Positions 1 through 64,000 of a DNA stretch of 64,000 bases are shown here, in pieces. The notes under the pieces are model-generated. The model was given only the letters and a program-made list of their open reading frames with translations, was not told the origin of the DNA and made no database searches. Every line of letters starts with the position of its first letter. The first letter of the stretch is position 1. Location: sequence record MK250027.1. One strand, 5' to 3'. Position numbers and translations under genes: made by a program.

Positions 1-1
1 T

Positions 2-1987
2 TTTACAATTCAAAGTGGAACTGCAAAAACAATAATATATGCATCTGGTAGAACTGATACTCAAAATAATCTCGGTTCTGATACATATACAAATAAAAAT
101 TAGATTACGTTCTATTATTATGTAGAAGATAGCAATGAATGGGTACAAGTAACTGGCGATTATATAAATATTAATTCAAATCCATCTGGAAATAATATAA
201 GTAAACAATATGAAATAACTTTTAATTTATCACAAAATTATCATCAATATTGGCGATTTACATTAAATAATATAAATTAGTATTATTATTTTAGATGTAA
301 TTATTATGATAAACCAAAAGATAACACATCATTTATAAATATGACTATACATCATCTTTTTGTATCTGATGAGTCTTTAATATAGGGAATGATAGAATAT
401 CAATTAGGTATGAGAAACCAACAGGATAAATCTACAAATCAAATATCATTAAAATATGCAGTATATAATACAATTACTGATATTAGAAATGATAATGAAA
501 AACCTAATGATAAGTCATCATTATCAATTATAGAACATGCAATTAATAACGCTGAACAATAGAATGTTATTATATGTATTGATAAAATAATATACATAGA
601 ACCTATTGCTTTTAAATCAACAGAACGATATGTATCAGAAAAATTTTATGGAAATATATATAGTCCGTTCCATGTAGCATATGAAACAAAATCATTTGAT
701 GGTATCTCAGCGTTTAATATACAAAAACAAATATATGGATATAATTTTAATTCATGTGCATTATTTGATAAAACTTCAGACTCGCGTGTAAAAATAGAAA
801 AACTATATAAAAAAGAAAGTGTAAATGTATATTTAGCATTTGAACCTATTTATATAATTAATAATGGTAATACATTTAAAGACAATAATGCAAAAGATGA
901 AGATATTATAAATGAGTATTCTACTTATTTTAATACATGTTCAATAACAAATATAAAATTAAGCAATAATGGTACAGAACAAACTATTAACAAGAATTCT
1001 GGTAATTCAAACAATAATTTTATTAAAAGTATATTTTCTAAATCTGTATATATTGACGCAACATCAATATGTATAAGTGTTACAAGTAATAAAACAGAAC
1101 CAATTTCTTCACTTATATATGATACAACCGATGGTTTAATAAACACCTATTTGTTCGATTTTGATATAAAATATTACAAATATAAAAATAATACAGAGAA
1201 ATTTGAAGAAACAAATAGTGTAAATGTAACAAATAAAATATAGTTAATGTAGCTAAATAATACATTAAGAAATATATAGTTGAATGGTGATGAGTAGTAT
1301 TTAATAAATATTGTTCTTAAAAAATTCAAGGAAAGATTAAAACATTTTACTATAACTGTTGTATCTAATATGGATGGATTAGAAGGTGTATGTAAAATAA
1401 AAATTAACGATCTTCCACAAGATTATGAAGAAGACACATTAAAGAAGTTTGTTGATGACGCTGTTTATTATACAAATACATTACAAGTTCCAAAAGGAAC
1501 TAAAATAGAAATAGAAATTATGTATGATTGGGATAATTAGGATGTATTTACATATAATGGATTATCAATAAATAATAGTGAACAGCATGATAAAACAGAA
1601 AATAATATTATATATACAGTAACTGATACTACAATAATACGATTAAATATAAGTTATAAGAATAATCAATCAGGTGGTACAGGAAATCAAATAAATTTAA
1701 ACAATTATGCAATTTAGATAAATTTTTAGAAAAATGGAGATAATGTTAAACCTGTATTATCAATATCGCCTGCTAATTCAACTATAGATATATATTATGC
1801 TACATATACAGATAAAAATAATCCAATAACATCATTAAACGGTGAAAATTCAATACGTTATAATGCAAACTAGGGAATACGTGAATATTCTTCTAATATA
1901 GGTATTTCTGCTACATTATATTATAATGGTCATTTTAAAAGTGGTGATAGCAATGCAACATATCGTTTTTATGAGTTTTCTGAGTAA
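2..1987 (+). CDS. 5'-partial large hypothetical protein, N/T/Y-rich, probably virion structural (TAG=Gln)
   Basis: Frame 2 reads FTIQSGTAKTIIYASG... and is interrupted only by TAG where checked; ends TAA 1985-1987, followed by a hairpin terminator. Confidence 0.7.
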
Positions 1988-2000
1988 AATTAAATATATA

Positions 2001-2035
2001 AAAAATCCAAACAACTAGAAATTGTTTGGATTTTT
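2001..2035. terminator. Bidirectional intrinsic terminator
   Basis: AAAAATCCAAACAA / TTGTTTGGATTTTT inverted repeat between convergent genes. Confidence 0.8.
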
Positions 2036-2093
2036 ATATTATAAAAATAATTTATAAAGTTAACAGTGGAATATTTCTTATATTTAAAAACAT

Positions 2094-2570
2094 TTAATCA
2101 ATGCCTAATTTAATACGATTTGAAATGAGATTCCATACCGTATTGGTAATAAAGTTTTCCTTTAGTTTCTTACCAACTGCAGGTTCAATATCTGACTTAA
2201 ATGTTTCTACTACATATTTACCATTACCAGTTCTGAAAGCCTCGGTAATAGCTACAAGATTTTTCTTAGTTTGTTTCTCTATATAAAGACGAATATCTTC
2301 CTTAGTAGAGTTAGCACTAAGAGTAATCATATTTTCATTTAAAAGTTTGATGCCTGCCTTGTTAATACCTGTTTTAGGTGACCAGTATTCGAATACTTTC
2401 TTGGCCATTTCTTTTTTCTGATCAGCAGGAAGATCTGACATATTTCCAGTAATCATATATGTCTCCTTAAGTACGTTAATAACGGCTACTTTTTGAGATT
2501 CATATAATTTCTCACGAGCCTCAAGTACCTATTTTTTACTATTATTATATACTGTACTAAAACTTTTCAT
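2094..2570 (-). CDS. Hypothetical protein, 158 aa (TAG=Gln)
   Basis: Track ORF 2094..2456 extends through one TAG to ATG 2570 (MKSFSTVYNNSKKQVLEAREKLYES). Confidence 0.8.
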
Positions 2571-2603: not shown

Positions 2604-2614
2604 TTATTTATCTA
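2604..2614 (-). promoter_or_regulatory. TAGATAAATAA motif, putative phage (late-type) promoter
   Basis: Exact 11-mer about 35 nt upstream of ATG 2570; recurs at 8566, 8582, 15715 and 23869, each correctly oriented upstream of a start codon. Confidence 0.55.
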
Positions 2615-7435: not shown

Positions 7436-7502
7436 TTAATTAAAAACTTTGTTTTCATATTTATTATTGAAAATAAATTATCTCGTTTTTTACAAATAAA
7501 AA

Positions 7503-8565: not shown

Positions 8566-8592
8566 TTATTTATCTAACAAATTATTTATCTA
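8566..8592 (-). promoter_or_regulatory. Tandem TAGATAAATAA motifs
   Basis: Exact copies at 8566-8576 and 8582-8592 upstream of ATG 8540. Confidence 0.55.
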
Positions 8593-9555: not shown

Positions 9556-9586
9556 TAAAATAAATACTTAAACATATATCTGATAT

Positions 9587-10585: not shown

Positions 10586-11059
10586 ATGAAGACTAATTTA
10601 AATGGTGGTTGTTTATTGCCAAATGAAGAAATTATTGTAAAGGATGGACTTGTATTGATGTCTGAAATTAAAGTAGGTGATAAAGTTTTATCACATGATG
10701 GTGATTACCATGAAGTAGAACATATATGGAATTTTGAGAAACCTACATACTATGTATCACTTTCAAACGGTGATCATATCGAATGTTCAAATACACATAG
10801 ATTCTTGGTAAATAAGAATAAGATTGAGAAGGAATCATCATGGAAAACTGCAGAAGAACTTCATGATGGAGATGAGATTTTCCAAATGAATCTCATTAAT
10901 ATTGATCCAAATGAGAAGATTAAATTTAATAAGTTGAAGATTGCCCGAATTTTCAAATCAGGAATTAATAATCCTGTGGTTGACATTACAGTAAAAGATA
11001 CACATACATATATCTCTGCGAACGGTATTGTCAATCATAATTCAGGATCTAATTTCTAA
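10586..11059 (+). CDS. Free-standing mini-intein (Hint domain) with minimal exteins
   Basis: MKTNLNGG|CLLPNEEI (block A), CSNTHRFL (block B, TxxH), VVDITVKDTHTYISANGIVNHN|SGSNF (blocks F/G with His-Asn-Ser); no endonuclease domain. Confidence 0.9.
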   Translation: MKTNLNGGCLLPNEEIIVKDGLVLMSEIKVGDKVLSHDGDYHEVEHIWNFEKPTYYVSLSNGDHIECSNTHRFLVNKNKIEKESSWKTAEELHDGDEIFQMNLINIDPNEKIKFNKLKIARIFKSGINNPVVDITVKDTHTYISANGIVNHNSGSNF

Positions 11060-11463
11060 TGGATTATAAAAATACATATTTAAAACCAGAAATTGCTTTT
11101 CTTCTCAAAAAACATCATTATGATATTTCAAAAACTAGATATATGATTAACAGGGATGGTGTGATAATTGAGTCTACCCCTGATTTAGATAAACATTATA
11201 ATCATCTTGAACTTGCATATAATCCTAACGCAAATGAAGTAATTAATTATTTTAAATCAAAAGGAATAATTATTCATATAAATGAAATAAAAGAAAATAA
11301 ATGGGAATGGATTATAACATTCAATAATAATGATAAAGCAATATATTCTGGTGAAACAGCAAATGGAAATTTAGGGCATAATCTTCCGGAATCACGACAA
11401 TATTTCAATAATGAAATAGATGCATATAACGATTGCATAATTGAATTAATAATTATAATTTAA
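11059..11463 (+). CDS. Hypothetical phage protein, probable paralog of 13026..13421
   Basis: TAATG coupling to the intein gene; YLKPEIAFLLKK resembles LVTNEIFEWLLN, and the C-termini are similar. Confidence 0.7.
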   Translation: MDYKNTYLKPEIAFLLKKHHYDISKTRYMINRDGVIIESTPDLDKHYNHLELAYNPNANEVINYFKSKGIIIHINEIKENKWEWIITFNNNDKAIYSGETANGNLGHNLPESRQYFNNEIDAYNDCIIELIIII

Positions 11464-11471
11464 AACAATAT

Positions 11472-11504
11472 GAGACTATAGAAATAAACTATAGTCTCTT
11501 TTTT
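11472..11504 (+). terminator. Intrinsic terminator
   Basis: GAGACTATAG-loop-CTATAGTCTC followed by a T run. Confidence 0.85.
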
Positions 11505-11510
11505 ATTTAA

Positions 11511-11530
11511 AATAAAAATATGTATCTTTG
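11511..11530 (+). promoter_or_regulatory. Bacteroidota-type -7 promoter element (TAnnTTTG), early-type
   Basis: AATAAAAATATGTATCTTTG upstream of the cca gene; nearly identical motifs at 30013 and 35876. Confidence 0.65.
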
Positions 11531-11549
11531 AAAAATAAAAAGAATAATT

Positions 11550-12821
11550 ATGGATAATAAAACATATTTAGTAATAAAAGATTATCTACGTATCATAATT
11601 AAAGATACTGAATTTGAAGATAATTTATTTGCTGTTGGTGGATGTTGTAGAGATGAAATCCTCGGTAATGATATTAAAGATTTAGATCTTGTTGTATCAC
11701 TTAATAATGGCGGTATTAAATTTGCAGAATGGTTAGAGAAAAATCATTATACAAAAGGAACCATTGTAACATATCCTCGTTTTGGAACTGCAATGTTTAG
11801 ACTTAAAGATTTTCCAGATGAAGAATTAGAAGTTGTTCAAACAAGAACAGAAATTTATAATTCAGATTCAAGAAAACCAACTACAACATATGGAAGTCTT
11901 AAAGAAGACTGTATGCGTCGAGATTTAACTATCAATGCAATTTATTATGATATATCAAACAGTAAAATGATTGATGTATGTGGTAGGTCATTTGATGATA
12001 TTAAAAATAAAGTAATTGTTACTCCATGTGACCCTGATAAAACATATATTGATGATCCTCTTAGAATTATGAGGTGTATTAGGTTCTCATGTAAGTTAGG
12101 TTGGGATATTGATAAAAATGTATTTGAAAGTATGAAAAGAAATGTAGATAGATTATCTATTATTTCAAAAGAAAGAATTAAAGATGAAGTTATGAAAATC
12201 TTTAAGTCTAATAATACGTTAAAAGGATTATGTTATATTAGAGATATTAATGCGATGAAATATATATTTCCTAATATGAGTATGTATTGTGGACCTACAT
12301 GTATTGAAAATAATTTTAAAAATATTGATACATTAAAAGATCCATATGTAAAACTTACTGTATTTAATCATAGTAATCCTGATTTAGATAAACAATTATA
12401 TGAACTTAAATTTTCAACTAATGAAATAAGAATTATTCTTAATTATATAAAATTATTTAACTATTCTATACATTGTAATACATTAAGTGATATTAGAGAA
12501 ATTCTTTATCTTTGTAAATCAAAAGACGTATTTAACAATGTATATGATATGTATAAAGTTATAGGATTTCATAAAAGATATATTGAATATGCGCATAATA
12601 ATATAGATACAGATGAATCATTATCTATAATGTTTAAATATAAGTTTCCTTTAAATGGTAATGATATTATGAATATATTTGATATTCATCCAAGTCCTGA
12701 AGTTAAAGAACTTATAGATAAGATGCATGAGTTTGTATATGAGAATCCATATCTTACAAAAGATGAACTTATTGAAAAGTTAAAAATATATAAAGAAACA
12801 AAATCTGATGAACAATGGTAA
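11550..12821 (+). CDS. cca: CCA-adding tRNA nucleotidyltransferase (class II / PolyA_pol family)
   Basis: VGGCCRD..DLDL, RRDLTINA and DDPLRIMRCIRF motifs; TAG-free. Confidence 0.9.
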   Translation: MDNKTYLVIKDYLRIIIKDTEFEDNLFAVGGCCRDEILGNDIKDLDLVVSLNNGGIKFAEWLEKNHYTKGTIVTYPRFGTAMFRLKDFPDEELEVVQTRTEIYNSDSRKPTTTYGSLKEDCMRRDLTINAIYYDISNSKMIDVCGRSFDDIKNKVIVTPCDPDKTYIDDPLRIMRCIRFSCKLGWDIDKNVFESMKRNVDRLSIISKERIKDEVMKIFKSNNTLKGLCYIRDINAMKYIFPNMSMYCGPTCIENNFKNIDTLKDPYVKLTVFNHSNPDLDKQLYELKFSTNEIRIILNYIKLFNYSIHCNTLSDIREILYLCKSKDVFNNVYDMYKVIGFHKRYIEYAHNNIDTDESLSIMFKYKFPLNGNDIMNIFDIHPSPEVKELIDKMHEFVYENPYLTKDELIEKLKIYKETKSDEQW

Positions 12822-12870
12822 TATTTACCATTATAATAAAAAGAATTATTAACTAAAATATATAAGAATT

Positions 12871-13020
12871 ATGAATTTAAATATTTCTCAAAGAGAAGGA
12901 ATTAAGAAGTGCCTTTATCAAGATTTGAAAAAGATGTATGATGCATTTATTCAAACTGATAAGAATGAAGTGGAAAAAGTGTTTAATGAATTTATTGATA
13001 AATGTGAACGTTATATTTAA
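12871..13020 (+). CDS. Small hypothetical protein, 49 aa
   Basis: MNLNISQREGIKKCLYQDLKKMYDAF... fills the operon gap; below the track length cutoff. Confidence 0.55.
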   Translation: MNLNISQREGIKKCLYQDLKKMYDAFIQTDKNEVEKVFNEFIDKCERYI

Positions 13021-13025
13021 TAATT

Positions 13026-13421
13026 ATGACATATTTTCAAAATTTAGTTACAAACGAAATATTTGAATGGTTATTGAATAATAAATTTCCTGCTGTCATA
13101 TGTTTTTATAATCATGGAAAGGAACAACTTTATTATACATTACCATATACAGATCCAAATTGGCAAAATTGCGATGCTTATTATAAACCAACATATTTTG
13201 ATGTATTACATTGGTTATTTAAAGAATATAATTTATATATCAATATAAATTCATATAATAATAAATTTTCAGTTCAAATTGAATATTTAACTAATCATAA
13301 AAATAAGTATTTTGGTAATTGCTGGGAAATTGGAGCGAATTGTAAAACTATTGAAGATTGTATTAAATCTGCAATAGAATATATTATTAAATGTGATATT
13401 TTAAATAAAATTAAATCATGA
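13026..13421 (+). CDS. Hypothetical phage protein
   Basis: Track ORF in a co-oriented operon; ATGA overlap with the next gene. Confidence 0.7.
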   Translation: MTYFQNLVTNEIFEWLLNNKFPAVICFYNHGKEQLYYTLPYTDPNWQNCDAYYKPTYFDVLHWLFKEYNLYININSYNNKFSVQIEYLTNHKNKYFGNCWEIGANCKTIEDCIKSAIEYIIKCDILNKIKS

Positions 13422-13606
13422 AATATATTAGGAAAGGACATATAGTAATATGTGACAATTGCGGTGCACATGTTCTCATTGAAAGTAAAAAGAAAGATAC
13501 TCATATGGACCATAATTGGAATCATACAAAGTATCTTCGTTATTTTACTTGTCCATGTTGTGGTGATGAAGTATATGCAGAATATCCTGAAGATGATCAA
13601 AATTAA
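13418..13606 (+). CDS. Small zinc-ribbon protein
   Basis: CDNCG...CPCCG; ATGA coupling. Confidence 0.7.
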   Translation: MKYIRKGHIVICDNCGAHVLIESKKKDTHMDHNWNHTKYLRYFTCPCCGDEVYAEYPEDDQN

Positions 13607-14145
13607 GTTAATGGTGAAAATAATTCTTTTTGCTCATTAATATATTTTTTAGCTTCTGGTAAATTATCAAATAATATATCATTCTCATCAGGTTGACAAT
13701 ATACCATATTGCCATTATCTTCTATTATATAGATTACACCAAATGGGTCTACCATCTGGGATGGTTCAATAGGTTTACTAAATATTATTTTCCTGATAGA
13801 ATTATCAACGATAACATAATATACATTTGCATTTGCGTCTATATTATCAGACCATTTACCTATGTAATTTATTTTATCATCATATGATGAAAGATTATTA
13901 TCCATTATATTATCGCCAAAAAATGATGCAAGATAATTATTATTTTGATTTACCTTATCTTGATTATCTCTTATTAGAAATTCAGATGTTAAATTAATTG
14001 ACGACTTATGATCATCTGGTATAAATATACCACCTATTACAATATCATCAAACTCATCTGAATCTTCTGTAGGATTTAACATCATATCACCTATATTTTT
14101 TAATTTTGGAATATATTTATGTTGAAGTTTGTAAGTATATTTCAT
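13603..14145 (-). CDS. Hypothetical protein, inverted relative to its neighbours
   Basis: 180-aa ORF with acidic, protein-like composition; its stop shares TTAA with the convergent gene. Confidence 0.7.
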   Translation of the reverse strand: MKYTYKLQHKYIPKLKNIGDMMLNPTEDSDEFDDIVIGGIFIPDDHKSSINLTSEFLIRDNQDKVNQNNNYLASFFGDNIMDNNLSSYDDKINYIGKWSDNIDANANVYYVIVDNSIRKIIFSKPIEPSQMVDPFGVIYIIEDNGNMVYCQPDENDILFDNLPEAKKYINEQKELFSPLT

Positions 14146-14181
14146 TTAATTTTAATTAATAATCTTTAAATATTTATTATA

Positions 14182-14478
14182 ATGACAATAACATATACAG
14201 CGTTCGATGGTAAAATCTTCGATAATAAAGAAGATTGCGAAAATTATGAAGATAAATTGAAATTACTTAGTGGCACTTATGATATACTTGATAAAATATT
14301 AAATAAACTTTATGGATATAAAGGTACTCTTTGGATTTGTGAAGAAAAAAATGAAATTGAACCACATTGTGGACAAGAATTACCAGGTCCAGGTGATATA
14401 TTATGTACAATTAATAATGAAGATTTAAATACATTATTTGTTATAAAGGGCTTACTTGAAAAATATAAAATTAAGTAA
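14182..14478 (+). CDS. Hypothetical phage protein
   Basis: MTITYTAFDGKIFDNKEDCENYE N-terminus typical of small phage proteins. Confidence 0.7.
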   Translation: MTITYTAFDGKIFDNKEDCENYEDKLKLLSGTYDILDKILNKLYGYKGTLWICEEKNEIEPHCGQELPGPGDILCTINNEDLNTLFVIKGLLEKYKIK

Positions 14479-14480
14479 TA

Positions 14481-14963: not shown

Positions 14964-15011
14964 ATAAGTTTACAACTAAATTACGTAAAGATAATAATAC
15001 AAAATTAGTAT

Positions 15012-15714: not shown

Positions 15715-15725
15715 TAGATAAATAA
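15715..15725 (+). promoter_or_regulatory. TAGATAAATAA motif upstream of tnpB copy 1
   Basis: Exact 11-mer shared with four other upstream sites. Confidence 0.5.
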
Positions 15726-19708: not shown

Positions 19709-19770
19709 AATTTAAATTATAATTAAAAATTCACATTTTATTATTTATTAAAAAAGGGTAACAATTAGTT

Positions 19771-44905: not shown

Positions 44906-44915
44906 CTTTCAATTA

Positions 44916-45170: not shown

Positions 45171-45259
45171 ATAATAAATATTCCTTTTATTTCATTATTT
45201 ATTATGAAAAAAGAGAATAACTCATTTCTGAATTACTCTCTTTTAATATTTTATATTTA

Positions 45260-45634: not shown

Positions 45635-45639
45635 AATTA

Positions 45640-47556: not shown

Positions 47557-47558
47557 TT

Positions 47559-48776: not shown

Positions 48777-48834
48777 TCAAATTATTTTCATTTAACTTAT
48801 TTATTCATGAAAATATTAATATGTGATTATTATA

Positions 48835-49716
48835 TTATGAAATAAAATAAAAATATGGGATAGTATTATCTAGAGATGGTACCCAAGTTGCAATGTGTTC
48901 ATATAAATAATACTTGCCTATCATAGAAGACTCATGTGCTGTATGGTCACAATAAAATAAACTAATAGCTTTATTTCTTGGTGTATGAGTTGTTTCACTG
49001 CGAACTTTATAAATACTATATTGTTCATACGTCCTATTATCATCATAATAAATATTATAATTTTCTCCATATACTATAGTATGTTGATCATATGTTTCAA
49101 TTCTGTTGTCGTCAGGTACTTTACTAATAATCTCACCCAAATTTATTGCGTGTTGAAGTACCATACCATTTATTATAACATCCTCGCTATATGAATTACA
49201 TGATATACAAATTAACGCTGATAAATCTACCATTTCTGGATATAACGGTTTTAATGGATTTGTTATATCTTCTTCTGTTACTAATGATATAAAATCTTCT
49301 TGCTTCTCATTAAATATAAAATAATTAGATGTATAACCACTTAATTCTACTGCATACATATACAATTCATTAGTATATTCAATACTAGCTGTTTGATTTA
49401 TTTTAAATAATGGTGTATTTTTATACGTATATGTAATTATTCTTGAACTCTAACTATCATTTTTAGTTATATTACATACTATTAGTAACGCTGTTCCTTC
49501 TGTACTTCCCTATTCATTTATTGTATATGCAGAACAACCATCATAATTAGAACTTATATCATATCTTGTTTGCTTTAAATTACCTTCATAATTTTCATCT
49601 TGATCTTCTAATCCAAAATAAAGAGAACTGTCTTGATAAGATAATGTTATATTGGTTTGCTCAGTTTCATCCTTAATTATTGTTATAACATCATTTAATT
49701 TTTTATATTTTGACAT
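48835..49716 (-). CDS. Hypothetical structural-region protein, 293 aa (TAG=Gln)
   Basis: Track ORFs 49510..49716 and 48835..49365 are in one frame. Confidence 0.75.
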
Positions 49717-49871
49717 ATTTTAATTTTTATTTTCTGTATCTATAAGTATATCTAAAATACCATATATTATTATACATAACTATTTTATTTAAACATAATT
49801 AACAAATTTTTGTATAATATATGTGTTGTTATATTCAAATAATAAATAACAAAAATATTATTTTTAATTTA

Positions 49872-50534
49872 ATGGATAAAGTTTTAATAGGATTTGATTT
49901 TTCAATGAATAAACCTGCAGCTACAATATATTTTAAAGGTTAGTATTATCATTATTTCTGGCCATTGAAAGTTACCAATAAAGTATAGAAAATGTATGAA
50001 GATGCAAATGTTCATATAATTAACAGAAATATGTCTTCAGTTGATACAAAGAAAGTAGAAAATTCATAGTTGGTTTTGATTCATACTATAAGGTCTACAG
50101 ATTTAGCAAATCTTATAATTTCTGATATAGATGATTTAATAGAAAATACATTTAATCTTTCAGAATATGAATTATATGTATGTTCAGAAGGTTTATCATA
50201 TGCATCAAAAGGTGACGCGACACTTAATCTCGCAACATATAAAGGTGTTCTTCTTTCAAAAATATATGAACATTATGGTGATCATCTGTCAAGACTTTAT
50301 ACATATTCACCTATTACTTTAAAGGCAACAGCCGGATGTTCATCAAAAGAGGATCGCGCTGATAAAACAAAGATGATTAAAAAATATATTGCATAGAATA
50401 ATAATATTAAGTTACGCCTTTGTTTAGTAAATGGTTATATGAAAGCGAAAACAAATTATATTCCCGGTATTGATGATTTGGTCGATTCATATTGGGCATT
50501 GAAAACCATGATGTTAAAAGAAAATATATCTTAA
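49872..50534 (+). CDS. RuvC-like Holliday junction resolvase, 220 aa (TAG=Gln)
   Basis: IGFDFSMNKPA, CSEGLSY, SPITLKATAG and DDLVDSY acidic triad. Confidence 0.75.
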
Positions 50535-50541
50535 TTTAATT

Positions 50542-53202
50542 ATGTCCGCAATATTAAATATGACAATCAATAATTCATATGATATGTTTGCTAATTAGAA
50601 AGTATCATCAGGAACTGTTGTAACAGAAGAAATGAAATCTGGACAACATAAAACTACAACAGAAATGGTAGATATTAATGCGTATGATTATGGTATCATT
50701 GATGTTGGTATGACTTAGTTTGATGATACATTAAATTATACAGATAAAGTTAAACAAGCATAGATAAGAATTGAATTATATAAACAACAACTTCAAGAAG
50801 CAAAAAGTTGGATAGAACCTTTATAGACAGAAATAAACAAAGTATAGTCTGAATATGATGATTATAAATCACAATATGATACGGCAAAGAAAGAAAATAC
50901 AAACGAAGCATTAATAAGTAATCTTAAAAATATTGTATCTAATTATAAAAAACAATTAAAAGATTTATAGTCTTAGTTTGATAAGAATAAAAAAATTACA
51001 TAGACTCATCCGAAACTTATTACTAATTATACAAATTTCTATAATGATTTGATAAAGTATGGTAGTAAGAAAGCAATAACAAAAATAGATGAGTTTGGTA
51101 ATGTTGAGCAAGCATAGCAAGTTGATTTAGATAATCTCGACATAAATCAAGCACCTGGTATGTCTATATCAGGAACCATAACAGACGCAGTTACACAATA
51201 TCTGGAAGTTACCGTATAGTCTTTAATTGCTGGTGGTGCTAGTAATATAATGAGTAGTTTAGGTATTAATTAGGAAACATTAGGTATGGCTAAAACTATA
51301 CTTAACCTTATGGATTCTGCATTATTCAATATTGTTGGCATTATTAAAATGGTGCCAACAAATATACATATGGTGCCAAGTGCTAAAGTAGCTATGAATA
51401 GTATATGTACATCTTTAAAAGATATGTATCAAGCTATATATATTGATTTGGAAAATTAGTATTATGAAACTATTAATGATGCAATTACTAATTTGCCTAC
51501 AATGTAGGAAATGTTAAAAGAAGCATAGGAAGTTCTCATTAATTCTATATGGTCAATGATAGATATGCAATGTGTTAAATACACAGGGCATACATTCGCT
51601 GAACTTTATTTCATGTGCTCAGATTATATTCATTTATATAAGGCATGGAAAGAAGCACGCAAGGAACGTAAACGTTAGAAAAAAGAAAAAGAGGAAGCAG
51701 AAAAAGAATCTGGTATATAGCATACATCTGGTGGTACTATACATAAAAAGATAACAGTTGAAACCGATCCAGATCTTATTAAAGAATCTTTAATGGAACA
51801 ATTAGCACAAGCTTCAGACCTAATATATAATTCATTTATTATTATATAGATAAAAGATGCTATAGATGATATAAAGATGTTAATAAGTTAGTTTAATAAT
51901 GTTGATTTAGATGTATTATCAGAAGGAATAGATTCATTTGAAGATTTAATGGATATGTTAGTTGAAATGGGTTTGGATAATGATGGTGCTGTTATAACAT
52001 TAGAGAAAGCAATACAAGAAGGTATAAATCAATTCTCCAGTAATCTAACAAGTTTATAGAATTAGATAACAGCGCAAGCAATCTCATCTGGACTTACTAT
52101 CGCGTCCACTGTCGCGTCCAGTACATCAATTAGTACAAGTATTAAGGATGAACATTTATACGACTTTACGAACGATTTAAACACATTTACGATGACTCTT
52201 AATATTTACAGTGATCCTACAACAAAGAAAGCAAAAAAAGAATTAACAAAAGTTTTATCAAATGCGCATCAAAAAGATGGAACAAAGATCTTTGAAGCAT
52301 CTGATGTATTGTCTATTATCAATGCTATAGATGAAGGATATGTAATGCAAAAAGATTAGACTTTAAATTTAGTTAATTTTACATTTAAGATTCATTTCGA
52401 AATAAAAGGATTTAACAAAACATTAAACGAAACAATAGATGCCGTTAAAATCGCTAATGAAATTGCATAGGAAACTGCAAAGGAGAAAAAGAAAAATGAT
52501 GCTATTGCATAGTTTGAATTAGGTATAGTTGAAGAAGAATATACAGGAGATCCAACTAAAGCAACGTAGAGACCTACATTCCAATTAGTTCATGAATTAT
52601 TCTCAATATTAAATGAGATATTTCCATAGTTAAAAATAATAATGAAACTTATAAGGAACTATAAGATTAATAAAGCAAAAGTTGAAGCAAATGCATCTGG
52701 TAATCTGCTCGGTATGGTAAAAGTATTAGCCGCAATTAATAAATTATTTAAAAAAGCTAATAAGAATAAAACGAATTTCTATACTGTAAGATCATTAAAA
52801 TTATATAATTACATAACAAAAAGTATTGTTTATATAGGTTCTGATATAGAAGTTAATATAGATATACCAAATACAAGAAAACTTTATCTTTATTTAAAAA
52901 ATGCTAATTTAAATTATGATGTAATTAAATAGGATTTACCTACCATTCTTTATATAGATTAGGAGTCTATAAAGGAACAGATGGATGCAATGAAAAAAGA
53001 TTTAGATAAAGCAAGTAATTATTTTGATGATGCATCTTTATTTGTTCAATATCCTGATTCGAAATATCCAGATGGAACATTATTAGGTTTAGATAAAGTT
53101 GAAGATGCAGATCCTGAAATTTATTATAGTGATTCATCATTACCTTTATATGGAAGTTAGATTTTAAGATGTTACGGTAAAGATTACGATATATATGAGT
53201 AA
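50542..53202 (+). CDS. Large hypothetical (likely virion) protein with coiled coils, 886 aa (TAG=Gln)
   Basis: ATG 50542 to TAA 53202; very TAG-rich; includes track ORF 52642. Confidence 0.75.
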
Positions 53203-53224
53203 AATATATTTAGATTATGATTAA

Positions 53225-56110
53225 ATGACAAAAGAAGAAAAAATATATTTGGATGATTTAATAACAAAAGCAATGACGGTCGATACAGATGAGATAGAAG
53301 GTTAGCAGACAATAAATCTTAATGATATAAATTTATGTGCTGTTGATTATTCAAAATCTGATATTACATCTGATTATGATGATTTCATGAATATAGACGG
53401 AATAACCGATTAGTCTATATTATAGAAAATGTATGACGACAAGGATTTATGGAAATTAATCATAACACCACCAGAAGAAGTACCTGATATATTATCTGAT
53501 ATTGATACAAGTACAAGAGTTATAATTGAATTTTCAGACGCTACTGTTAAAGATCCAAATCCTGTTGAATATTCTCTTAATATAAAACCAGGAGATACAA
53601 TAGACAACAATACTATAATAGGGTCTGTTATGTAGGAAGGAAAGATGAAACCAATTAAATCCATATTTGAAAAAGGACATGTAATGAGTAAGAATGATGA
53701 CACTGAGTTTTTTAGATTATATCCTTCTAAATGTGACAGACATATAGTATTGGATAATACATTAATAGGATTGAATGAAGATTATAATGTTGTTAATGAT
53801 GTTTCAGAAATAAATGCTGAATTTTCAAAGGAAGGTTCATTATATGCTCTTATAACTAATAATTTATGTTAGTCCCTTTTGCCATGCGTATTAGCAAGGA
53901 GATATAGAGGGACATATACAAGAACAAAAACCAGAGTATATACAACAGATAGTTTAGGACATTGGGAATATGGAAATTGGTATTTAAATTCTTCTGACGC
54001 AAGTTATGATACATTAGGGTTAGATACATCATTAATAGTTGATAGCAGTTTATATAAAGAATATAAAGATAACGCAAAATATGATACATCTTTATTTGTT
54101 TTTGATATAACTAATGAGAAATTAAATACTGGTGTTACAATATATGATACGTCCATTATGATGAATCTTCATGAATCACAAGATGTATTTGGTTCATCTA
54201 TTATCGCAGAGGATGTTACAAAAGCTGACATGAAATCCTGGAGAAAACGTGCAAAGAAAAAACGTAAAAGAAAGAAAGTAAAAAAAGAAATAAAAGATAA
54301 AGCATACAGGTAGACAAACAGAATTAAAAATTCTGATAATCCATATGAAGCAATATAGAAAGAAGGGAAACGTTTATTAGATGCAAGAACCAAATATGTT
54401 GATGATATTATAAAATTATATAAATCATTAGATACATTGCCATTATGTAAATATGATCCTAATTATACAGATTGTAAATTCCTAGTAAACAACAATATAG
54501 ACGGTAAAACATATACTGAAGCGAATAGATATGATGATGAATTCTCTTATATACCTATCGGAGATTCGGACCATTATTAGAATTATTATTATAGTTTACT
54601 TGGAAATATTAATTTATTATCAGGATCAACAGATACTTATTCATAGGAATATTATAACTTAATAACAGATATTATCAACAAAAGATTAGTAATAGAATCA
54701 AGACATAGTGAAGATCTTATGTATGATTTTATGAATTTATTTAATAATAATGTTAAATAGTTATTCAATATATATGTAAAGAACTTAACAAATGATATTA
54801 TAAAAAGAGAATTTAATAAGCTAAAACCGTTAATTGCTACTTATGTATAGAATGAAAATAAATCATATAAGGAGTCTATAAGGAAATAGTTCACTGTTGA
54901 TAATAAAGAGAAATATGGATAGGAATTAGATGAAGAAGCAATTCAAAATGCAGGTGAAAAATATACAGGAGATAATGAATATAAACAAATATATGATTAT
55001 ATTTCTTCTTTATATTCATATGATTCAGATGAAGACACTGACACACCTAATGAGATTTGTTCATAGTTAGCAACAATGTATACTTATATAAAATCATATG
55101 GTGATGGAAGTTCTAATCCGTATAAGGATATTAAAGATAAAAATGAACCTTATATATATTTAAAATTAATATAGGAAGAATCAAAGAAAATAAGAGAATT
55201 TTGGGATAAAGTTCTAAAAGAATATGAAGATTGTTCATATGATAAATGTTATAATTCACTTATAAATTTATCTGAAAAAATGGATGAATATGCATAGTGG
55301 CCAACGCCTTAGGATATAACAATAGATAACATATATTATCAACATTATTTGTTTGAGAACATATATCCAAGTGATTTAGATAGTTCAATTAATGACATAA
55401 GTATAGGCGATTATAATTTTCCTGATGAAGTTGATTTCCCTGAAATACCAGATGATGTTTCAGTTGATGAAAATTGGGCTATTGATGAAATGAATAAACA
55501 TGAATAGTTACCACCTGATGACATAAACGCGATAACTTTTAAAGACTTTCCATATTGGAAAAAATATTTCGCATTAGCTACACTTATATGTATTGTTCCG
55601 ACATTCTGGAATTGTGGTCTTGATATATTTCCATTTATATAGTGTATACCTTTACCATGTATATTCATTGCTATTAAATCAATATATATACCGATGTTCA
55701 ATATGATAATGGTATTTGGAATTGCTATACGAGGAATGTACCCATGGCCAATTATTTTATATGTTAACACAAGTGATCAACCTATATCTATATTAACGCC
55801 GTTAATTGCTATATTAGATAGATTAAAAAATGTATTTTATGGGAAATTAGATAAGATAGAACAAGTTCCTATATAGTCTTTAGCTAATGCGTATATAGCT
55901 AAATTAAATAAGGAAATTAATGATTTGAAAAAAGAAAATATTAAATTAGATAATTTTAAAACAGTTATAAAATCATTGAATGTTCCAAAAGCAGAAAGTA
56001 TAAAGAGATAGTTTGCGTCTATAGTAGATCCATCAATCGATATGAGACAAAGACTTACAAGATTAGAAACATTATCAAGAAAATCAAAAGCTAATTACAT
56101 GGCTAAATAA
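53225..56110 (+). CDS. Large hypothetical (likely virion) protein with a hydrophobic Pro/Cys-rich C-terminal region, 961 aa (TAG=Gln)
   Basis: Joins track ORFs 53429, 53645, 53879 and 55694; ends TAA 56110. Confidence 0.75.
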
Positions 56111-56115
56111 TTATC

Positions 56116-56814
56116 ATGGCATATACAAAAGATAAATTTTTAACAGATATTAAAAAGATGAATAAAATAAATGACAAATATGAAGATAAGGCATACGAGT
56201 CTATTGTAGAAAATCTGTTTTTATTAAATAAAAGAGGTAAATGGAAAGCAATGGGGTTAGATGAATATGATTCAGAATCTAATTCTAAATTAACTTTAAT
56301 TCCTGGACATATCTATATGTTTAAATATATTACCGATACAGCAACTAAATATAATGACGGACATATTAAGTTTGAATATTATGACACATTGCCATTGGTA
56401 TTATGTACGGGGAATAATAAGAATATTATATCGGGTATTAATCTTAATTTATGTAGTTATGAATTAAGAACATTAATATTGAATGATGTATATAATTTAG
56501 ATCCTGATTTCTTTAATACTAAAGCATCGGAGCAAGCACATCAAGGTTAGTTGCCAATATCATAGAATATAAATAAATTCTTCATAAATGATGATGGTTA
56601 GACAAAGTTATTAAATTATATTAAAAAGAAATATAACTTATAGAATACAGGATTTATATTCAGGACATATAATATTAAGAAAATAAAGGACATAAGATTT
56701 ATAGAACCATGGCAATGGCAATATATTCCATTCTTAAAATATAAACAATCTGTTAAAGAATCAATATTAAATATGATATAGAATATAACAGGGATTAGTA
56801 AAATTAAAATATAA
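56116..56814 (+). CDS. DNA end protector protein, T4 gp2-like, 232 aa (TAG=Gln)
   Basis: GHIYMFKY...YYDTLPLVL...GINLN motif; extends through TAGs to TAA 56814. Confidence 0.75.
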
Positions 56815-61148: not shown

Positions 61149-61153
61149 TTTCA

Positions 61154-62308
61154 TCAATTATTCTTTTTTAATCCTGATATTGTTCGGTCTTTAATATTTA
61201 CATATGATTCCAATCCATTAATCAAAGACACGGTAACATTAGGTAAATCATTATATTTAACTTTATTGATTAAGTCATTTAATTTTACATAATCATAATT
61301 CTATACAATATTATAATCATATATTTTATCATAACATAATCGGAAATCCTAAAATTCTTTATTCTAAAAATGCAATATAGTATTATTTGTTTTATCTTCC
61401 AGAATTTTATTAAAACTATTTAGTGAATCCTAATTTTTATAATTCTATGGTACAGATATTTTATATACAACACCATAATATATTACAGATGAATCATTAT
61501 GTGTATAATTATATATTGATGCGTCTATATTACATGCAACGTTTTTACACGTACTTATAAAATCTGTAATATTTTTATTATTAGTTTGTTCTACTGTATA
61601 TACAGGCGAATAATCATTAGTCTTTACTGTATTTGTATTATTATATTTTGTATAAACATTTGCATCAAGATATATTGGATAATTTGAACTTAACATAAAT
61701 CCGTTATATTTTTTACTAAACTTTATATCAAGATTCATATCATGTTCGCCACTATACATTGATTTCATACTAATATAATTAACATCCTTATTACCTATAT
61801 CATCTTTCTGTATTATTGATAATAAACCATTTCCTGTTGTATTATCATTTTGGTCACATATAGTAAGTTTATTTGATCTTAATGAACCATTCGCATCACC
61901 AAATAATACTTCTTTAATTACCTTACCTTTCTCATCTGTAATATTTTTATTTTCAAACGTACCTATTTGTGTAATTATTTTTTCTATATCCTAATTGGTT
62001 ACACTTGTACCGTTTTTTATTACTCTTATTAATTCATTTATATCTTGTAACATAAATACTTTTCCTTCAGGATCAAAGAACTAATCATTATTAACAAATT
62101 TTCTGTTTAATAAAATATCTTTTGTCTTTAATGGTAATAATCTTGAAGTAATTTTCTATGCAAATCCAGTGAACTCACCAGGAAGTGTGTATTCACTGAA
62201 GAATAAACTACTTCCTGGTGTTCCCTGTTCACCGTCTTTACCTTGTATACCATAAGTGGCAATACCTGGTGCATATGTATCATTATGAAATCTCTAAGAA
62301 ATCTGCAT
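61154..62308 (-). CDS. Tail-associated protein with a short collagen-like N-terminus, 384 aa (TAG=Gln)
   Basis: PGIATYGIQGKDGEQGTPGSSLFF; ends TGA 61154. Confidence 0.7.
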
Positions 62309-62313
62309 ACTTT

Positions 62314-63999
62314 TTATCGCTTATAAATTTTAACTGTTGGATATATATTCTTACCAGTTGTTTCATTAATCACAATAGTTAGAGTATTTAAATTTTCTTT
62401 TGTTTCTATATTTGTAGAATAATTTTCATACTTATAATATGTGTTTAAATTAGCTGGTTTTTCAGTTACTATATTTATATTTGAATTTGGTTCTGTGTCT
62501 TTTGCATAAAGTTCAACTTCAATATTTGACTATGCATTATAATATACTGATAATGTATGATTTATATAATTTTTCTAACCTGTATATTGAGAATCTTTAA
62601 AATAATTCCAATTTTCATTAAATGATTCATTATTTATAAAATGATTAAATATTGCGGATGTTAAATTTATAGTTATAACTGTATTACCTTGATTAATATC
62701 AGAAATATTATATGAAGAATCTGAATAATTAACAGATAATATGTCATTCGCAGTAGGATAAACAAATTTATTAATTAATATATAATCATTATGAATAACC
62801 ATACAGTGTGAACCTAAGAATGATTTATCATCAATTCCTGTTTTATGTCCATCAATACTTATATAATCATTTTCATTAAGATATTTACGATAATAATTAT
62901 TATCCCATGTCGCGCTTAATAATGAACGATTATCTACTAAATAATAATTTTTATTTAATCTCTATAAATTAGTGTCTTCAAATACTTTATTACCTGGATA
63001 ATTCTGTATTCTATTAATATTTTTTATTTTTGTATTAGATTGCAATAAATCAACATTAAGAATATCTCGTAATTCATCATCTATATAAAAATCAACCATA
63101 TTATTCGTATTAGGTGTAAACCATCCGTAATTAAATTTAATCTAATTAGGTATTGATAATGTAAATATTAATGGATTATATTCTTCTGTATTATGTATTA
63201 ATTTAACCTCTGCTTTTTCTGGGATAATATATATATCAATATCATTAGTAAATGTATCAACATATCGTTTTAACTTATCCTTCGGTGTTTCTAATGATAT
63301 TAATTTTGATATATACTTCTTAAAATGTGTTAAATTAGTTCCTGTTATCAATTTCGTGTTAGTTAATAAGTTTGTTTTATCATTTTTATATGATATAATA
63401 AACTAATCACTATTAAGAATATTTGATAATTTTATATTGTTAACATTATTTACATTATTTTGTTTCTTTATAGTTAATCCTAATTTATTTTCATTTAATG
63501 TTATTAATTTCGGATTTAATACATTTGTTATATTTAAATGCTAACTTATATTTTTTCCTATAGTTGTAGTACGTCTTATAACATTTTCAAGGATCTATTT
63601 AGCTGTATGATTATATTCACCATCTGCCTTTGTAATAATATACGCATGACTATTACTTGATATTGAATTTACATGAGTTAATGTACCTGGATAATCAATA
63701 TACTCATAATTTGTTAATACACCAATATCATTATAATTATTAACAGAAACATATTCATTACAATCAACTGAATTTTCCATATTAAATGAAACAAACTATG
63801 GTGAATTAGTTGATAATGTTGTATTTACTATCGGTACATCATACTATGTAAATAATGAAGACCATAAATTATGTTCATCTATTAATGACATTAATTGTTT
63901 ATGAAAATTATTCTTCTTATGAGCATGAATACCATTATTCATACAGTTAAGTGTCCTGAAATCAATATCATATGGTGCGTTAAGAACTGCATAATCAGC
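62314..63999 (-). CDS. 5'-partial large structural-region protein (TAG=Gln)
   Basis: Track ORFs 63595, 63142 and 62575 appear to be pieces of one frame ending at TAA 62314. Confidence 0.65.
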
Positions 64000-64000
64000 A

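What the first reader, a model, noticed from the sequence alone, without database searches (positions are those of the whole stretch)
1..64000. TAG-Gln use is partitioned by gene class and tracks promoter type
Seen: dam, cca, intein, phosphoesterase, RNA ligase, sigma, clamp loader, Hc1, PTH2-like and SLOG genes have no in-frame TAG, while structural genes, the resolvase and both TnpBs are full of them. The genes directly after the three ATGTATCTTTG (host-type) promoters are all TAG-free. The genes after TAGATAAATAA (2570, 8540, both tnpB) all contain TAG. Known: recoded phages enrich recoded codons in late genes. Inference: a two-layer timer in which transcription class and code switch are coupled.
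Basis: partly seen in the sequence, partly recalled or inferred. Interest (0 to 1): 0.65.

Follow-up and report, generated by a model that had tools for sequence, protein, structure and literature searches.

The report
Promoter type predicts TAG-codon use
In this giant gut phage (Lak-B8), genes behind host-style promoters never use the recoded stop codon TAG, while genes behind T4-style late promoters use it for about a third of their glutamines. The uneven spread of TAG was already known for Lak phages. The promoter link, and a late sigma factor that itself needs TAG read-through, are new and testable.

Summary
The window is Prevotella phage Lak-B8 (MK250027.1, bases 310001-374000), a known TAG-to-Gln megaphage.

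**Observation: confirmed.** 25 of 57 complete genes are TAG-free, against 6.3 expected.

**Whole genome (window plus the rest of the record, gaps not looked up):**
- Host-type motif, TGTATCTTTG (matches the Bacteroidota -7 box TAnnTTTG): it sits 19-53 nt before 45 starts, and 43 of those genes are TAG-free. In both exceptions the TAG lies 1 or 4 codons before the end.
It sits about 27 nt before 115 starts; 86 of those genes contain TAG, and TAG makes up 36% of their Gln codons.
- Strength: Fisher p = 3e-17. The link survives controls for GC, gene length, Gln count and circular shifts, and it repeats in Lak-C1 (p = 6e-16).

**Extra findings:**
- TAG acts as a stop in at least one early gene.
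- TAG codons cluster towards the 5' ends of genes.
- The genome's gp55-like late sigma carries three conserved in-frame TAGs.

**Limits.** The partition itself was published (Devoto 2019; Borges 2021); the promoter coupling was not found in those papers. Timing is inferred: there is no expression data.

The parts
11520..11530 (+). E-type (host sigma-A-like) promoter motif ATGTATCTTTG, 19 nt before the CCA-adding enzyme gene 11550-12821 (0 TAG)
   Evidence: The motif is conserved before the Lak-C1 ortholog.
30022..30032 (+). E-type promoter motif before RNA ligase 30063-31130, sigma factor 31178-32113 and ORF 32124-32627 (all 0 TAG)
   Evidence: Conserved before the Lak-C1 ortholog.
35885..35895 (+). 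E-type promoter motif before the 66-aa ORF 35940-36140 (0 TAG). Hc1 and tRNA(UUA) follow on the same strand.
2604..2614 (-).
8566..8592 (-). Two tandem L-type motifs (TAGATAAATAA at 8566 and 8582) before gene 7872-8540 (2 TAG)
9560..9566 (+). L-type core ATAAATA. It lies between TAG-free dam and the 330-aa gene 9587-10579 (8 TAG), which sits inside an otherwise TAG-free same-strand run.
15715..15725 (+). TAGATAAATAA 158 nt before tnpB 15884-17014 (8 TAG). An inverted repeat (15745-15776 / 15817-15848) lies between them, so its role as the tnpB promoter is uncertain.
23869..23879 (-). L-type motif 31 nt before the 451-aa gene 22482-23837 (12 TAG). It heads the minus-strand TAG-rich run 19771-23837.
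48798..48804 (-). L-type core heading the structural unit: tail-fibre-like 47559-48776 (6 TAG), baseplate wedge 45640-47556 (13 TAG), gp25-like 45260-45634 (3 TAG)
45196..45202 (-). L-type core before 44916-45170 (2 TAG) and the 1828-aa gene 39419-44905 (39 TAG)
7458..7464 (-). L-type core before the 878-aa gene 4799-7435 (9 TAG).
19742..19748 (-). L-type core before the 638-aa gene 17792-19708, which is TAG-free despite 14 Gln codons. This is an exception showing that L does not force TAG use. Other L-flagged TAG-free genes have cores at 14171-14177(-), 36214-36220(+) and 37531-37537(+).
10586..15687 (+). TAG-free block (11 ORFs, one on the minus strand): Hint/intein, CCA enzyme, GNAT and small ORFs
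   Evidence: The Lak-C1 orthologs are also TAG-free.
30063..32627 (+). TAG-free block: RNA ligase, sigma factor (r2 + r4 domains) and a 167-aa ORF
34877..38662 (+). TAG-free block: AAA clamp-loader-like, 66-aa ORF, Hc1, tRNA(UUA), two 125-127-aa ORFs (one is PHROG 'hydrolase') and a 365-aa ORF
38684..56814 (.). TAG-rich structural / late block on both strands (2 to 39 TAG per gene), including the RuvC-like resolvase 49821-50534 and the DNA-end-protector-like gene 56116-56814
36509..36581 (+). tRNA with anticodon UUA (ochre-suppressor type), in the TAG-free E-headed unit
   Evidence: Conserved in Lak-C1.
27326..27781 (.). Assembly gap (456 N). The other gaps are 3090-3110 and 26099-26201. None was filled or looked up.

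Best explanation
Lak-B8 appears to run a T4-like temporal programme in which promoter class and the meaning of TAG go together.

**Shown**
1. Two separate upstream motif classes exist.
   - E: a T-rich block followed by ATGTATCTTTG, 19-53 nt before the start.
   - L: WATAAATA followed by N4-AA, about 27 nt before the start. It is orientation-specific and has no conserved -35 element.
2. E-headed genes and the same-strand genes after them avoid TAG almost completely. L-headed genes use TAG for about a third of their Gln codons.
3. TAG means Gln in L genes, by its ortholog substitution pattern. In at least one E gene it ends the protein.
4. TAG avoidance in the TAG-free genes is conserved between lineages about 80% identical in DNA.
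5. TAG codons lie nearer the 5' end than CAA/CAG in the same genes.
6. The genome holds a class-I release factor (RF2 in Devoto 2019), a tRNA(CUA), a TAG-free sigma as second gene of an E unit, and a gp55-like late sigma with three conserved in-frame TAGs.

**Inferred**
- Host RNA polymerase with sigma-A reads E promoters straight after infection, and host ribosomes translate these genes under the standard code. They include sigma, RNA-repair enzymes, tRNAs and the release factor.
- Once tRNA(CUA), helped by the phage release factor, makes TAG readable, the amber-locked gp55-like sigma can be made. It then directs the polymerase to WATAAATA promoters.
- The late mRNAs carry 5'-biased TAGs, so any leaky early transcript gives only short peptides.
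- The result is a serial plus parallel (AND-type) gate on late genes and on selfish genes (TnpB, GIY-YIG).
For: **Identity and code.** The window is Lak-B8. TAG as sense gives 93% against 55% coverage.

**E class.**
- 37 exact ATGTATCTTTG sites genome-wide. 33 are intergenic, and every next gene is TAG-free.
- 56 copies of the 10-mer share a flanking consensus.
- The motif matches the Bacteroidota -7 TAnnTTTG (PMC7366714).

**L class.**
- Unbiased k-mer contrast: ATAAATA is upstream of 71/104 TAG-rich genes against 28/151 TAG-free ones; TGTATCTT is 0/104 against 36/151.
- The position peaks 20-30 nt before the ATG, and there is no -35 signal.
- Forward orientation 67/103, reverse complement 6/103, same-composition 7-mers about 22/103.
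- It matches the T4-like late consensus, A or T at -13 followed by ATAAATA (PMC1524935).

**Association.**
- E 43/45 TAG-free against L 86/115 with TAG, Fisher p = 3e-17.
- Same-strand runs: 155/166 TAG-free after E against 98/252 after L.
- Circular shifts: observed 129, maximum 91.
- Log-odds 3.9 after GC and length, holding in all GC strata.
- Replicated in Lak-C1: E 40/42 TAG-free, L 80/107 with TAG, p = 6e-16.

**Meaning of TAG.**
- Gln: 39 of 78 changed TAG sites are CAA or CAG in Lak-C1.
- Conserved avoidance: 0 of 117 Gln codons of TAG-free B8 genes are TAG in C1, against 20 of about 150 in the late block.
- Stop in E genes: all four E exceptions have the TAG 1-23 codons before the end, and the C1 RNA-ligase TAG falls 2 codons after the B8 stop.
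- 5' bias: p = 0.004 and p < 0.001 in gene sets with well-supported starts.

**Machinery.**
- gp55-like sigma: PHROG 234 'late sigma transcription factor' E = 4e-11. The only PDB match at E up to 1 is T4 gp55, 7D7C_F.
- Its TAGs are at codons 20, 33 and 46 and are identical in Lak-C1.
- Release factor, TAG-free. tRNA(CUA).

**Link to late function.** Structural genes (baseplate, gp25-like, tail fibre) sit in L-headed units.
Against: - There is no transcript-level evidence. 'Early' and 'late' therefore rest on motif similarity and gene function.
- About three quarters of TAG-free genes with an upstream gap have neither motif, so at least one class is undefined.
- The promoter class of tRNA(CUA), the key switch component, could not be assigned.
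- The ATAAATA before the gp55-like gene lies inside a terminator-like hairpin, so it is unknown how that gene is first transcribed.
- 29 of 115 L-flagged genes are TAG-free against 11 expected. ATAAATA before TAG-free genes is no commoner than control 7-mers, so some L calls are chance hits.
- The E motif is far more uniform than a typical host promoter set: 35 of 40 TAnnTTTG hits are TATCTTTG. That would also fit a dedicated phage factor.
- The 5' bias of TAG is modest.
- Gene calls come from a simple ORF rule, not a trained gene finder.
Confidence: 0.65

Rival explanations
1. **Permissive model.** The same promoter classes exist, but TAG has no timing function. TAG is simply another Gln codon wherever the suppressor is already present (late genes), and it is purged only from genes that must be translated before that. 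The association is then a by-product of selection on early genes, not a second 'timer layer'.
For: - The rule is one-sided: E is strictly TAG-free, while L genes range from 0 to many TAGs.
- TAG and CAA/CAG interchange freely between orthologs in late genes.
- CAA+CAG density is the same in E and L genes, 2.26 against 2.20 per 100 codons.
Against: - TAG is shifted towards 5' ends relative to CAA/CAG within the same genes. Neutral synonymous use does not predict this.
- Three TAGs are conserved in the first 46 codons of the late sigma.
- Selfish genes inside TAG-free neighbourhoods are TAG-rich: three TnpB copies with 8-12 TAGs and a GIY-YIG gene with 8.
Confidence: 0.22
2. **The E motif is read by a phage-encoded sigma, not by host sigma-A.** A candidate is the r2+r4 sigma at 31178-32113. 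The two classes would then be two phage-controlled classes (for example middle and late), and true immediate-early promoters would lie among the unclassified genes.
For: - The motif is extremely uniform: the 10-mer occurs 56 times with conserved flanks.
- Generic TAnnTTTG other than TATCTTTG is not enriched.
- The genome encodes at least three sigma-like proteins.
Against: - The core fits the host -7 consensus exactly.
- The window's sigma is itself the second gene of an E-headed unit. That would need self-priming.
- E sites also precede the tRNA array, which fits immediate use of host polymerase.
Confidence: 0.1
3. **Mosaic origin or artefact.** TAG-free genes are recent imports from standard-code genomes that brought their own promoters, or the pattern comes from ORF calling with TAG read through.
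For: Hc1 (36254-36433) has 46% GC against about 24% locally, and all its Gln codons are CAG. It looks host-derived.
Against: - TAG-free genes have phage-like GC (E class mean 0.28, L class 0.265).
- Their E promoters are near-identical copies, not diverse imports.
- TAG-free status and the E motifs are conserved in Lak-C1 orthologs at 50-94% protein identity.
- The motif counts do not depend on gene calls (control patterns 0 and 3).
Confidence: 0.03

Closest known systems
Stop-codon recoding (TAG to Gln, code 15) concentrated in structural and lysis genes of Lak and crAss-like phages (Devoto et al. 2019, PMC6784885; Borges et al. 2021 preprint, 10.1101/2021.08.26.457843)
   Same: - It is the same phage clade: the window is Lak-B8.
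- Large TAG-free regions, with TAG in the structural regions.
- tRNA(CUA) and release factor 2 encoded by the phage.
- A model in which early genes use the host code and recoding delays late proteins.
   Different: - Those papers define classes by gene function and genome maps. The word 'promoter' does not occur in either, nor in the 2021 Lak survey. 'Sigma' does not occur in the recoding preprint.
- New here: two explicit motif classes that predict TAG use, the strict one-sided rule, ortholog evidence for TAG as a stop in an early gene, the 5' bias of TAG, and in-frame TAGs in the late sigma gene.
Bacteriophage T4 late transcription: TATAAATA promoters read by gp55, with gp33 and the sliding clamp gp45 (PMC1524935; PDB 7D7C)
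   Same: - An 8-base A/T motif with A or T at the first position.
- No -35 element.
- It lies just upstream of late and structural genes.
- The genome has a gp55-like small sigma.
   Different: - The host is a Bacteroidota member.
- gp33-like and gp45-like partners were not sought.
- The late sigma gene needs stop-codon suppression to be made, which T4 does not require.
- No TSS data.
Bacteroidota primary sigma (sigma-ABfr) promoters: -7 TAnnTTTG and -33 TTTG (PMC7366714)
   Same: The E core TATCTTTG fits TAnnTTTG and lies at a plausible distance from start codons.
   Different: - The phage version is almost invariant over 10-11 bases.
- It has a T-rich block instead of a clear -33 TTTG.
- About a third of copies are followed by a shared leader sequence.
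Recoded homing endonucleases in alternatively coded phages (Borges et al. 2021: a group I intron endonuclease in an early gene of an Agate phage)
   Same: Selfish nuclease genes sit in otherwise stop-free surroundings and carry many recoded stops. Here these are a GIY-YIG gene with 8 TAGs beside tRNA(CUA), and TnpB copies with 8-12 TAGs.
   Different: Here it concerns TnpB (IS200/IS605-type) as well as GIY-YIG, in a TAG-recoded phage rather than a TGA-recoded one.

Membership tests
Code-15 (TAG = Gln) recoded phage | Coding density rises sharply when TAG is read as sense | tested here: met
   55% to 93% ORF coverage. No gain from TGA.
Code-15 (TAG = Gln) recoded phage | TAG aligns with Gln codons in orthologs | tested here: met
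   Of 147 aligned TAG sites compared with Lak-C1, 69 stay TAG and 39 are CAA or CAG. The next most common are GAA (7) and AAA (7).
Code-15 (TAG = Gln) recoded phage | Suppressor tRNA(CUA) and a release factor that spares TAG | tested here: met
   tRNA(CUA) at genome 415017-415089. A class-I release factor with PCRF and RF-1 domains at 291973-293109. Both lie outside the window. RF2 specificity is taken from Devoto 2019 and was not tested here.
Bacteroidota sigma-A promoter (E class) | -7 box TAnnTTTG | tested here: met
   TATCTTTG is present in all E sites.
Bacteroidota sigma-A promoter (E class) | -33 TTTG element | tested here: inconclusive
   The consensus upstream is a T-rich block (ATTTTTTtaTTTnAAA). 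TTTG is present in only some copies.
Bacteroidota sigma-A promoter (E class) | Transcription starts about 7 nt downstream and depends on the host holoenzyme | not testable with these tools
T4-type late promoter (L class) | WATAAATA core without a -35 element, directly upstream of late genes | tested here: met
   Structural units are headed by it.
T4-type late promoter (L class) | A gp55-family sigma encoded by the phage | tested here: met
   PHROG 234 E = 4e-11. T4 gp55 (7D7C_F) is the only PDB match, E = 0.014. The Pfam Sigma70_r2 score is below the cut-off at 20.7 bits.
T4-type late promoter (L class) | gp33-like co-activator and sliding-clamp dependence | not tested
   Only a clamp-loader-like AAA protein was seen in the window.
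TnpB (IS200/IS605 OrfB) | OrfB_IS605, Cas12f1-like TNB and HTH domains - gene 15884-17014 | tested here: met
   Pfam E = 3e-27, 1.5e-24 and 1.2e-16. Two paralogs lie elsewhere in the genome.
   No Pfam, PHROG or PDB match. There is only a 35-residue local similarity around an IEDLN motif, pairwise E = 0.001.

The most novel reading that the evidence does not exclude
The code switch sits upstream of late transcription. The gp55-like late sigma of Lak phages can only be made after TAG becomes readable, because it has three conserved TAGs in its first 46 codons. So suppressor tRNA and release-factor activity license the WATAAATA promoter class, whose mRNAs are in turn amber-locked near their 5' ends. 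Within one genome TAG would then have two meanings, decided by promoter class: stop in host-promoter genes and Gln in late-promoter genes.
Probability: 0.4. Interest if true: 0.7.

Novelty: new variant of a known kind. Interest (0 to 1): 0.55.

Why it matters
Lak megaphages are uncultured, so their infection programme can only be read from sequence.

- **Expression class from DNA.** Two simple motifs that sort genes into TAG-free and TAG-using sets give a sequence-only way to assign hundreds of unknown genes to an expression class. They also tell gene callers where TAG should be read as stop and where as Gln.
- **A bench test without culturing.** The amber-locked late sigma turns the general idea that recoding delays late genes into a concrete circuit. 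It can be tested with purified Bacteroidota polymerase, the phage sigma factors and a suppressor tRNA.
- **Selfish genes.** The pattern suggests that TnpB and homing endonucleases inside the phage are kept silent early by the same lock.

Tried and rejected
- **Expression data.** The run search found only contigs holding small shares of the stretch. The L core at 7833-7839 is reported by coordinates only.
- **Whole genome file.** None is held for this window. I joined the record's other parts to the window instead. I did not fetch the record's copy of the window, so the N gaps were not looked up. In Lak-C1 I left out the stretches I estimated to be orthologous to the three gaps.
- **A third promoter class for the many TAG-free genes with neither motif.**
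  - AGACTTT is enriched, but it is mostly the 3' arm of terminator hairpins (AAAGTCT...AGACTTT).
  - AGACT-N17-TAnAnn is no commoner than control patterns (76 against 50-100). Rejected.
- **TAG as a frequent stop in TAG-free genes.** Single TAGs are not enriched near 3' ends overall (8 observed against 8.4 expected). Only the few E-class cases fit that reading.
- **TAA recoding, suggested by the tRNA(UUA).** ORF coverage gives no support.
- **Shared IS ends behind the two 'tnpB' motifs.** The shared pieces are not collinear.
- **Gene names.**
  - PTH2-like and SLOG are unconfirmed.
- **A tmRNA or tRNA before the release-factor gene.** Rfam found nothing.
- **A mistyped reference.** One search returned an error because of it.

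Full report
**What the window is.** Bases 39400-64000 match Prevotella phage Lak-B8 (MK250027.1) at 100% identity, which places the window at record bases 310001-374000. Lak-B8 is a 551,627-bp circular metagenome-assembled megaphage genome from baboon faeces. The window has about 24% GC. Reading TAG as a sense codon raises non-overlapping ORF coverage from 55% to 93%; reading TGA as sense gives no gain. The record carries no annotation.

**Gaps first.** The three N runs are at 3090-3110, 26099-26201 and 27326-27781.
- Gap 1 lies between two minus-strand genes. The stop of 3127-4785 is outside it, but the frame of the SET-like gene 2630-3082 is open for the two codons up to the gap, so its start, its TAG count (2) and its promoter are uncertain.
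- Gap 2 lies between two convergent stops, 95 and 89 nt away, and touches no called gene.
- Gap 3 lies between two divergent starts, and both frames are closed by stops before the gap. The ORF 27270-27797 is made of N and is an artefact.
- No site named in the finding depends on continuity across a gap.

**The observation in the window.**
- Verified TAG-free genes: Dam methylase, a free-standing Hint/intein domain, a CCA-adding enzyme, a GNAT, a metallophosphoesterase, an RNA-ligase-like protein, a sigma factor with regions 2 and 4, an AAA clamp-loader-like protein and Hc1.
- Verified TAG-containing genes: TnpB (8), a RuvC-like resolvase (4), a gp25-like protein (3), a baseplate wedge protein (13), a tail-fibre-like protein with an S74 chaperone domain (6) and a DNA-end-protector-like protein (5).
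- Most large TAG-rich ORFs have no family match.
- 25 of 57 complete genes are TAG-free against 6.3 expected from uniform use. The 132 Gln codons of those genes are all CAA or CAG, whereas TAG makes 46% of Gln codons in the other genes.
- The names PTH2-like and SLOG could not be confirmed.
- The second 'tnpB' (22482-23837) is unverified.

**Genome-wide test of the first motif.** With only three and four cases, the motif link in the window is weak on its own (p about 0.008). I therefore joined the rest of the record to the window and called 614 ORF-genes with TAG as sense.
- 382 genes are TAG-free against 151 expected, and TAG-free and TAG-containing genes are clustered (runs test z = -6.8).
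- ATGTATCTTTG occurs 37 times. 33 sites are intergenic, mostly 19-58 nt before an ATG and pointing at it, and every downstream gene is TAG-free, including genes of 300-550 aa.
- The sites share a long consensus: a T-rich block, about 10 bases, then ATGTATCTTTG. About a third also share a leader sequence.
- The core TATCTTTG fits the Bacteroidota primary-sigma -7 box TAnnTTTG, so 'host-type' is a fair label.

**Genome-wide test of the second motif.** TAGATAAATAA has 13 sites. All are intergenic, but two of the eleven next genes are TAG-free, five have a single TAG, several sites are 96-773 nt from the next gene, and one precedes a tRNA. An unbiased k-mer contrast of upstream regions gave the real class.
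- ATAAATA precedes 71 of 104 TAG-rich genes against 28 of 151 TAG-free ones. TGTATCTT precedes 36 of 151 TAG-free genes and none of the TAG-rich ones.
- ATAAATA peaks 20-30 nt before the start. It is usually preceded by A or T, is followed four bases later by AA, and has no conserved upstream element.
- It is orientation-specific: 67/103 forward, 6/103 reverse complement, about 22/103 for 7-mers of the same composition.
- This is the late-promoter consensus of T4-like phages, A or T followed by ATAAATA. In the window it heads the baseplate and tail-fibre unit.

**Strength of the association.** I defined class E as one mismatch or fewer to TGTATCTTTG with TTTG kept, 10-75 nt before the start. 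Class L is ATAAATA 12-45 nt before the start.

| Measure | E class | L class |
|---|---|---|
| Genes headed by the motif | 45 | 115 |
| TAG-free genes | 43 | 29 |
| TAG share of Gln codons | 1% | 36% |
| Same-strand runs, TAG-free / total | 155 / 166 | 98 / 252 |
| Lak-C1 replicate, TAG-free / total | 40 / 42 | 27 / 107 |

- Fisher p = 3e-17 in Lak-B8 and 6e-16 in Lak-C1. Lak-C1 comes from a human host and is about 80% identical in DNA; it carries 30 exact E 11-mers against 0 and 3 for control patterns.
- Circular shifts of gene order never approach the observed agreement (129 of 160; shifted mean 71, maximum 91). Length-matched expectations give p = 1e-6 for E and 6e-18 for L.
- A codon-level logistic model gives a class effect of 3.9 log-odds after GC and length (bootstrap 2.9-5.4), and the contrast holds in each GC stratum.

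**What TAG means in each class.**
- In the late block, half of the TAG sites that differ between Lak-B8 and Lak-C1 or Lak-A1 are CAA or CAG, far ahead of any other codon. TAG is therefore Gln there.
- In TAG-free genes, none of 117 Gln codons is TAG in Lak-C1, against about 13% in the late block. The orthologs, at 50-94% identity, are themselves TAG-free with two single exceptions. Avoidance is thus maintained by selection.
- The four E-class genes with a TAG (two per genome) have it 1-23 codons before the next stop. In the Lak-C1 RNA ligase the TAG falls two codons after the point where the Lak-B8 protein ends. In host-promoter genes TAG therefore seems to act as a stop, though early genes mostly avoid it altogether.
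- E motifs are conserved before the Lak-C1 orthologs of the CCA enzyme and the RNA ligase, while the flanks differ.

**Signs of a lock rather than mere tolerance.**
- Within TAG-containing genes the first TAG lies earlier than expected if TAG were dealt at random among that gene's Gln sites.
- This holds in two gene sets with well-supported starts: L genes with the motif 18-35 nt upstream (p = 0.004), and operon-internal genes with gaps of 12 nt or less (p < 0.001).
- All three TnpB copies carry 8-12 TAGs. A GIY-YIG endonuclease with 8 TAGs sits 24 nt before tRNA(CUA), inside a TAG-free run.

**The switch machinery.** The genome has 33 tRNAs, including tRNA(CUA) at 415017 and tRNA(UUA) in the window. 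It also has a TAG-free class-I release factor. Three sigma-like genes were found:
- the window's sigma, TAG-free and second gene of an E unit;
- a second large sigma at 199564-200577, with one TAG eight codons before its end;
- a 128-aa protein at 405195-405581 that matches PHROG 234 'late sigma transcription factor' (E = 4e-11). Its only PDB match is T4 gp55.

That gp55-like gene has TAG at codons 20, 33 and 46, inside the aligned region; one falls in a YV-NKEL motif shared with gp55. All three are identical in Lak-C1. A working late sigma therefore needs TAG read-through. This links the two layers directly.

**Most likely mechanism.**
- *Shown:* the two motif classes, their near-exclusive link with TAG use, conservation across lineages, the two meanings of TAG, the 5' bias and the TAG-bearing late sigma.
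- *Inferred:* E promoters are read by host sigma-A polymerase at once and translated by the host code. The suppressor tRNA and release factor then make TAG readable. The late sigma is then made and turns on WATAAATA promoters, whose messages are also TAG-locked.
- *Not resolved:*
  - the promoter of tRNA(CUA);
  - how the late sigma gene is first transcribed, since its ATAAATA lies in a hairpin;
  - the targets of the other two sigmas;
  - the promoters of most TAG-free genes.

**What is already known.** Devoto et al. 2019 reported that TAG is unused in large parts of Lak genomes and used in structural regions. They also reported the CUA tRNA, several suppressor types and release factor 2. Borges et al. 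2021 proposed that recoding delays late and lysis proteins, and they noted a recoded homing endonuclease. Neither paper, nor the 2021 Lak survey, contains the word 'promoter', and 'sigma' is absent from the recoding preprint. The promoter coupling and the amber-locked late sigma therefore appear new within the literature I could search. They extend a known model rather than found a new one.

**Verdict.** Novelty: a new variant of a known kind. Interest 0.55.

Noticed in passing
window 36509-36581 (+): A well-formed tRNA with anticodon UUA (Rfam tRNA, 59.5 bits) sits in the TAG-free E-headed unit and is conserved at the same place in Lak-C1. Yet TAA ends 533 of 614 genes, and ORF statistics give no sign of TAA recoding. 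It might read UAG by wobble, or it may be kept in check by both release factors acting at UAA. Its amino-acid identity is unclear: it is about 66% identical to several tRNAs.
   Followed up: partly
genome 405195-405581 (outside the window; L008:31195-31581): A gp55-like late sigma gene with three in-frame TAGs at codons 20, 33 and 46, conserved in Lak-C1. The ATAAATA upstream of it lies inside a terminator-like hairpin.
   Followed up: yes
downstream of E motifs, e.g. genome 149114, 198140, 258314, 427038: About a third of the E promoters (16 of 56) are followed by a shared leader: TATTGTTAATAAA, then a variable stretch, then AACAATTAAAAATATAAAG just before the ATG. The TTGTT and AACAA parts could pair. 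The window's three E sites carry only the first part, or a weak version of it.
   Followed up: no
window 36254-36433 (+): The Hc1 histone-like gene has 46% GC in a 24% GC genome, and all three of its Gln codons are CAG. It looks like a recent gain from a bacterium. An ATAAATA lies 33 nt upstream.
   Followed up: no
window 15884-17014; genome 92921-94054 and 218578-219711: Three TnpB paralogs carry 8, 12 and 9 TAG codons. A GIY-YIG endonuclease with 8 TAGs lies 24 nt before tRNA(CUA), at genome 414232-414993. Selfish nuclease genes are TAG-rich even inside TAG-free neighbourhoods.
   Followed up: partly
window 17792-19708 (-): A 638-aa gene with 14 Gln codons and no TAG lies at the end of a TAG-rich minus-strand run and has a canonical AATAAATA motif 33 nt upstream. 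Its Lak-C1 ortholog (65% identity) is also TAG-free. Pfam and PHROGs give no match.
   Followed up: partly
window 9587-10579 (+): A 330-aa gene with 8 TAGs and only 19% GC, with its own L core, is wedged between TAG-free dam and the TAG-free Hint domain. It is 99% identical in Lak-C1, far more conserved than its neighbours.
   Followed up: no
many intergenic sites, e.g. genome 291890-291950; window about 27782-27800: Terminator hairpins often use the same stem ends (AAAGTCT ... AGACTTT followed by a T run). This made AGACTTT look like a third upstream motif.
   Followed up: yes
genome about 291860-291900 (outside the window; L006): A tRNA-like 3' end (T-arm-like GGTTCGAATCC followed by an acceptor-like end) lies just before the release-factor gene, in a 650-nt stretch with no convincing ORF. 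ARAGORN and Rfam call nothing there. The release factor has SPY where RF2 usually has SPF.
   Followed up: partly
window 15771-15799 and 23925-23953: A 29-nt inverted repeat (93% complementary) lies near both TAGATAAATAA sites, but in a different order relative to the motif. These are therefore not shared IS ends.
   Followed up: partly
Nothing from it was sent to search tools afterwards.
   Followed up: no
window 10586-11059 (+): A free-standing 157-aa Hint/intein splicing domain with no visible host protein around it, directly followed by a 134-aa ORF that overlaps it by one base.
   Followed up: no
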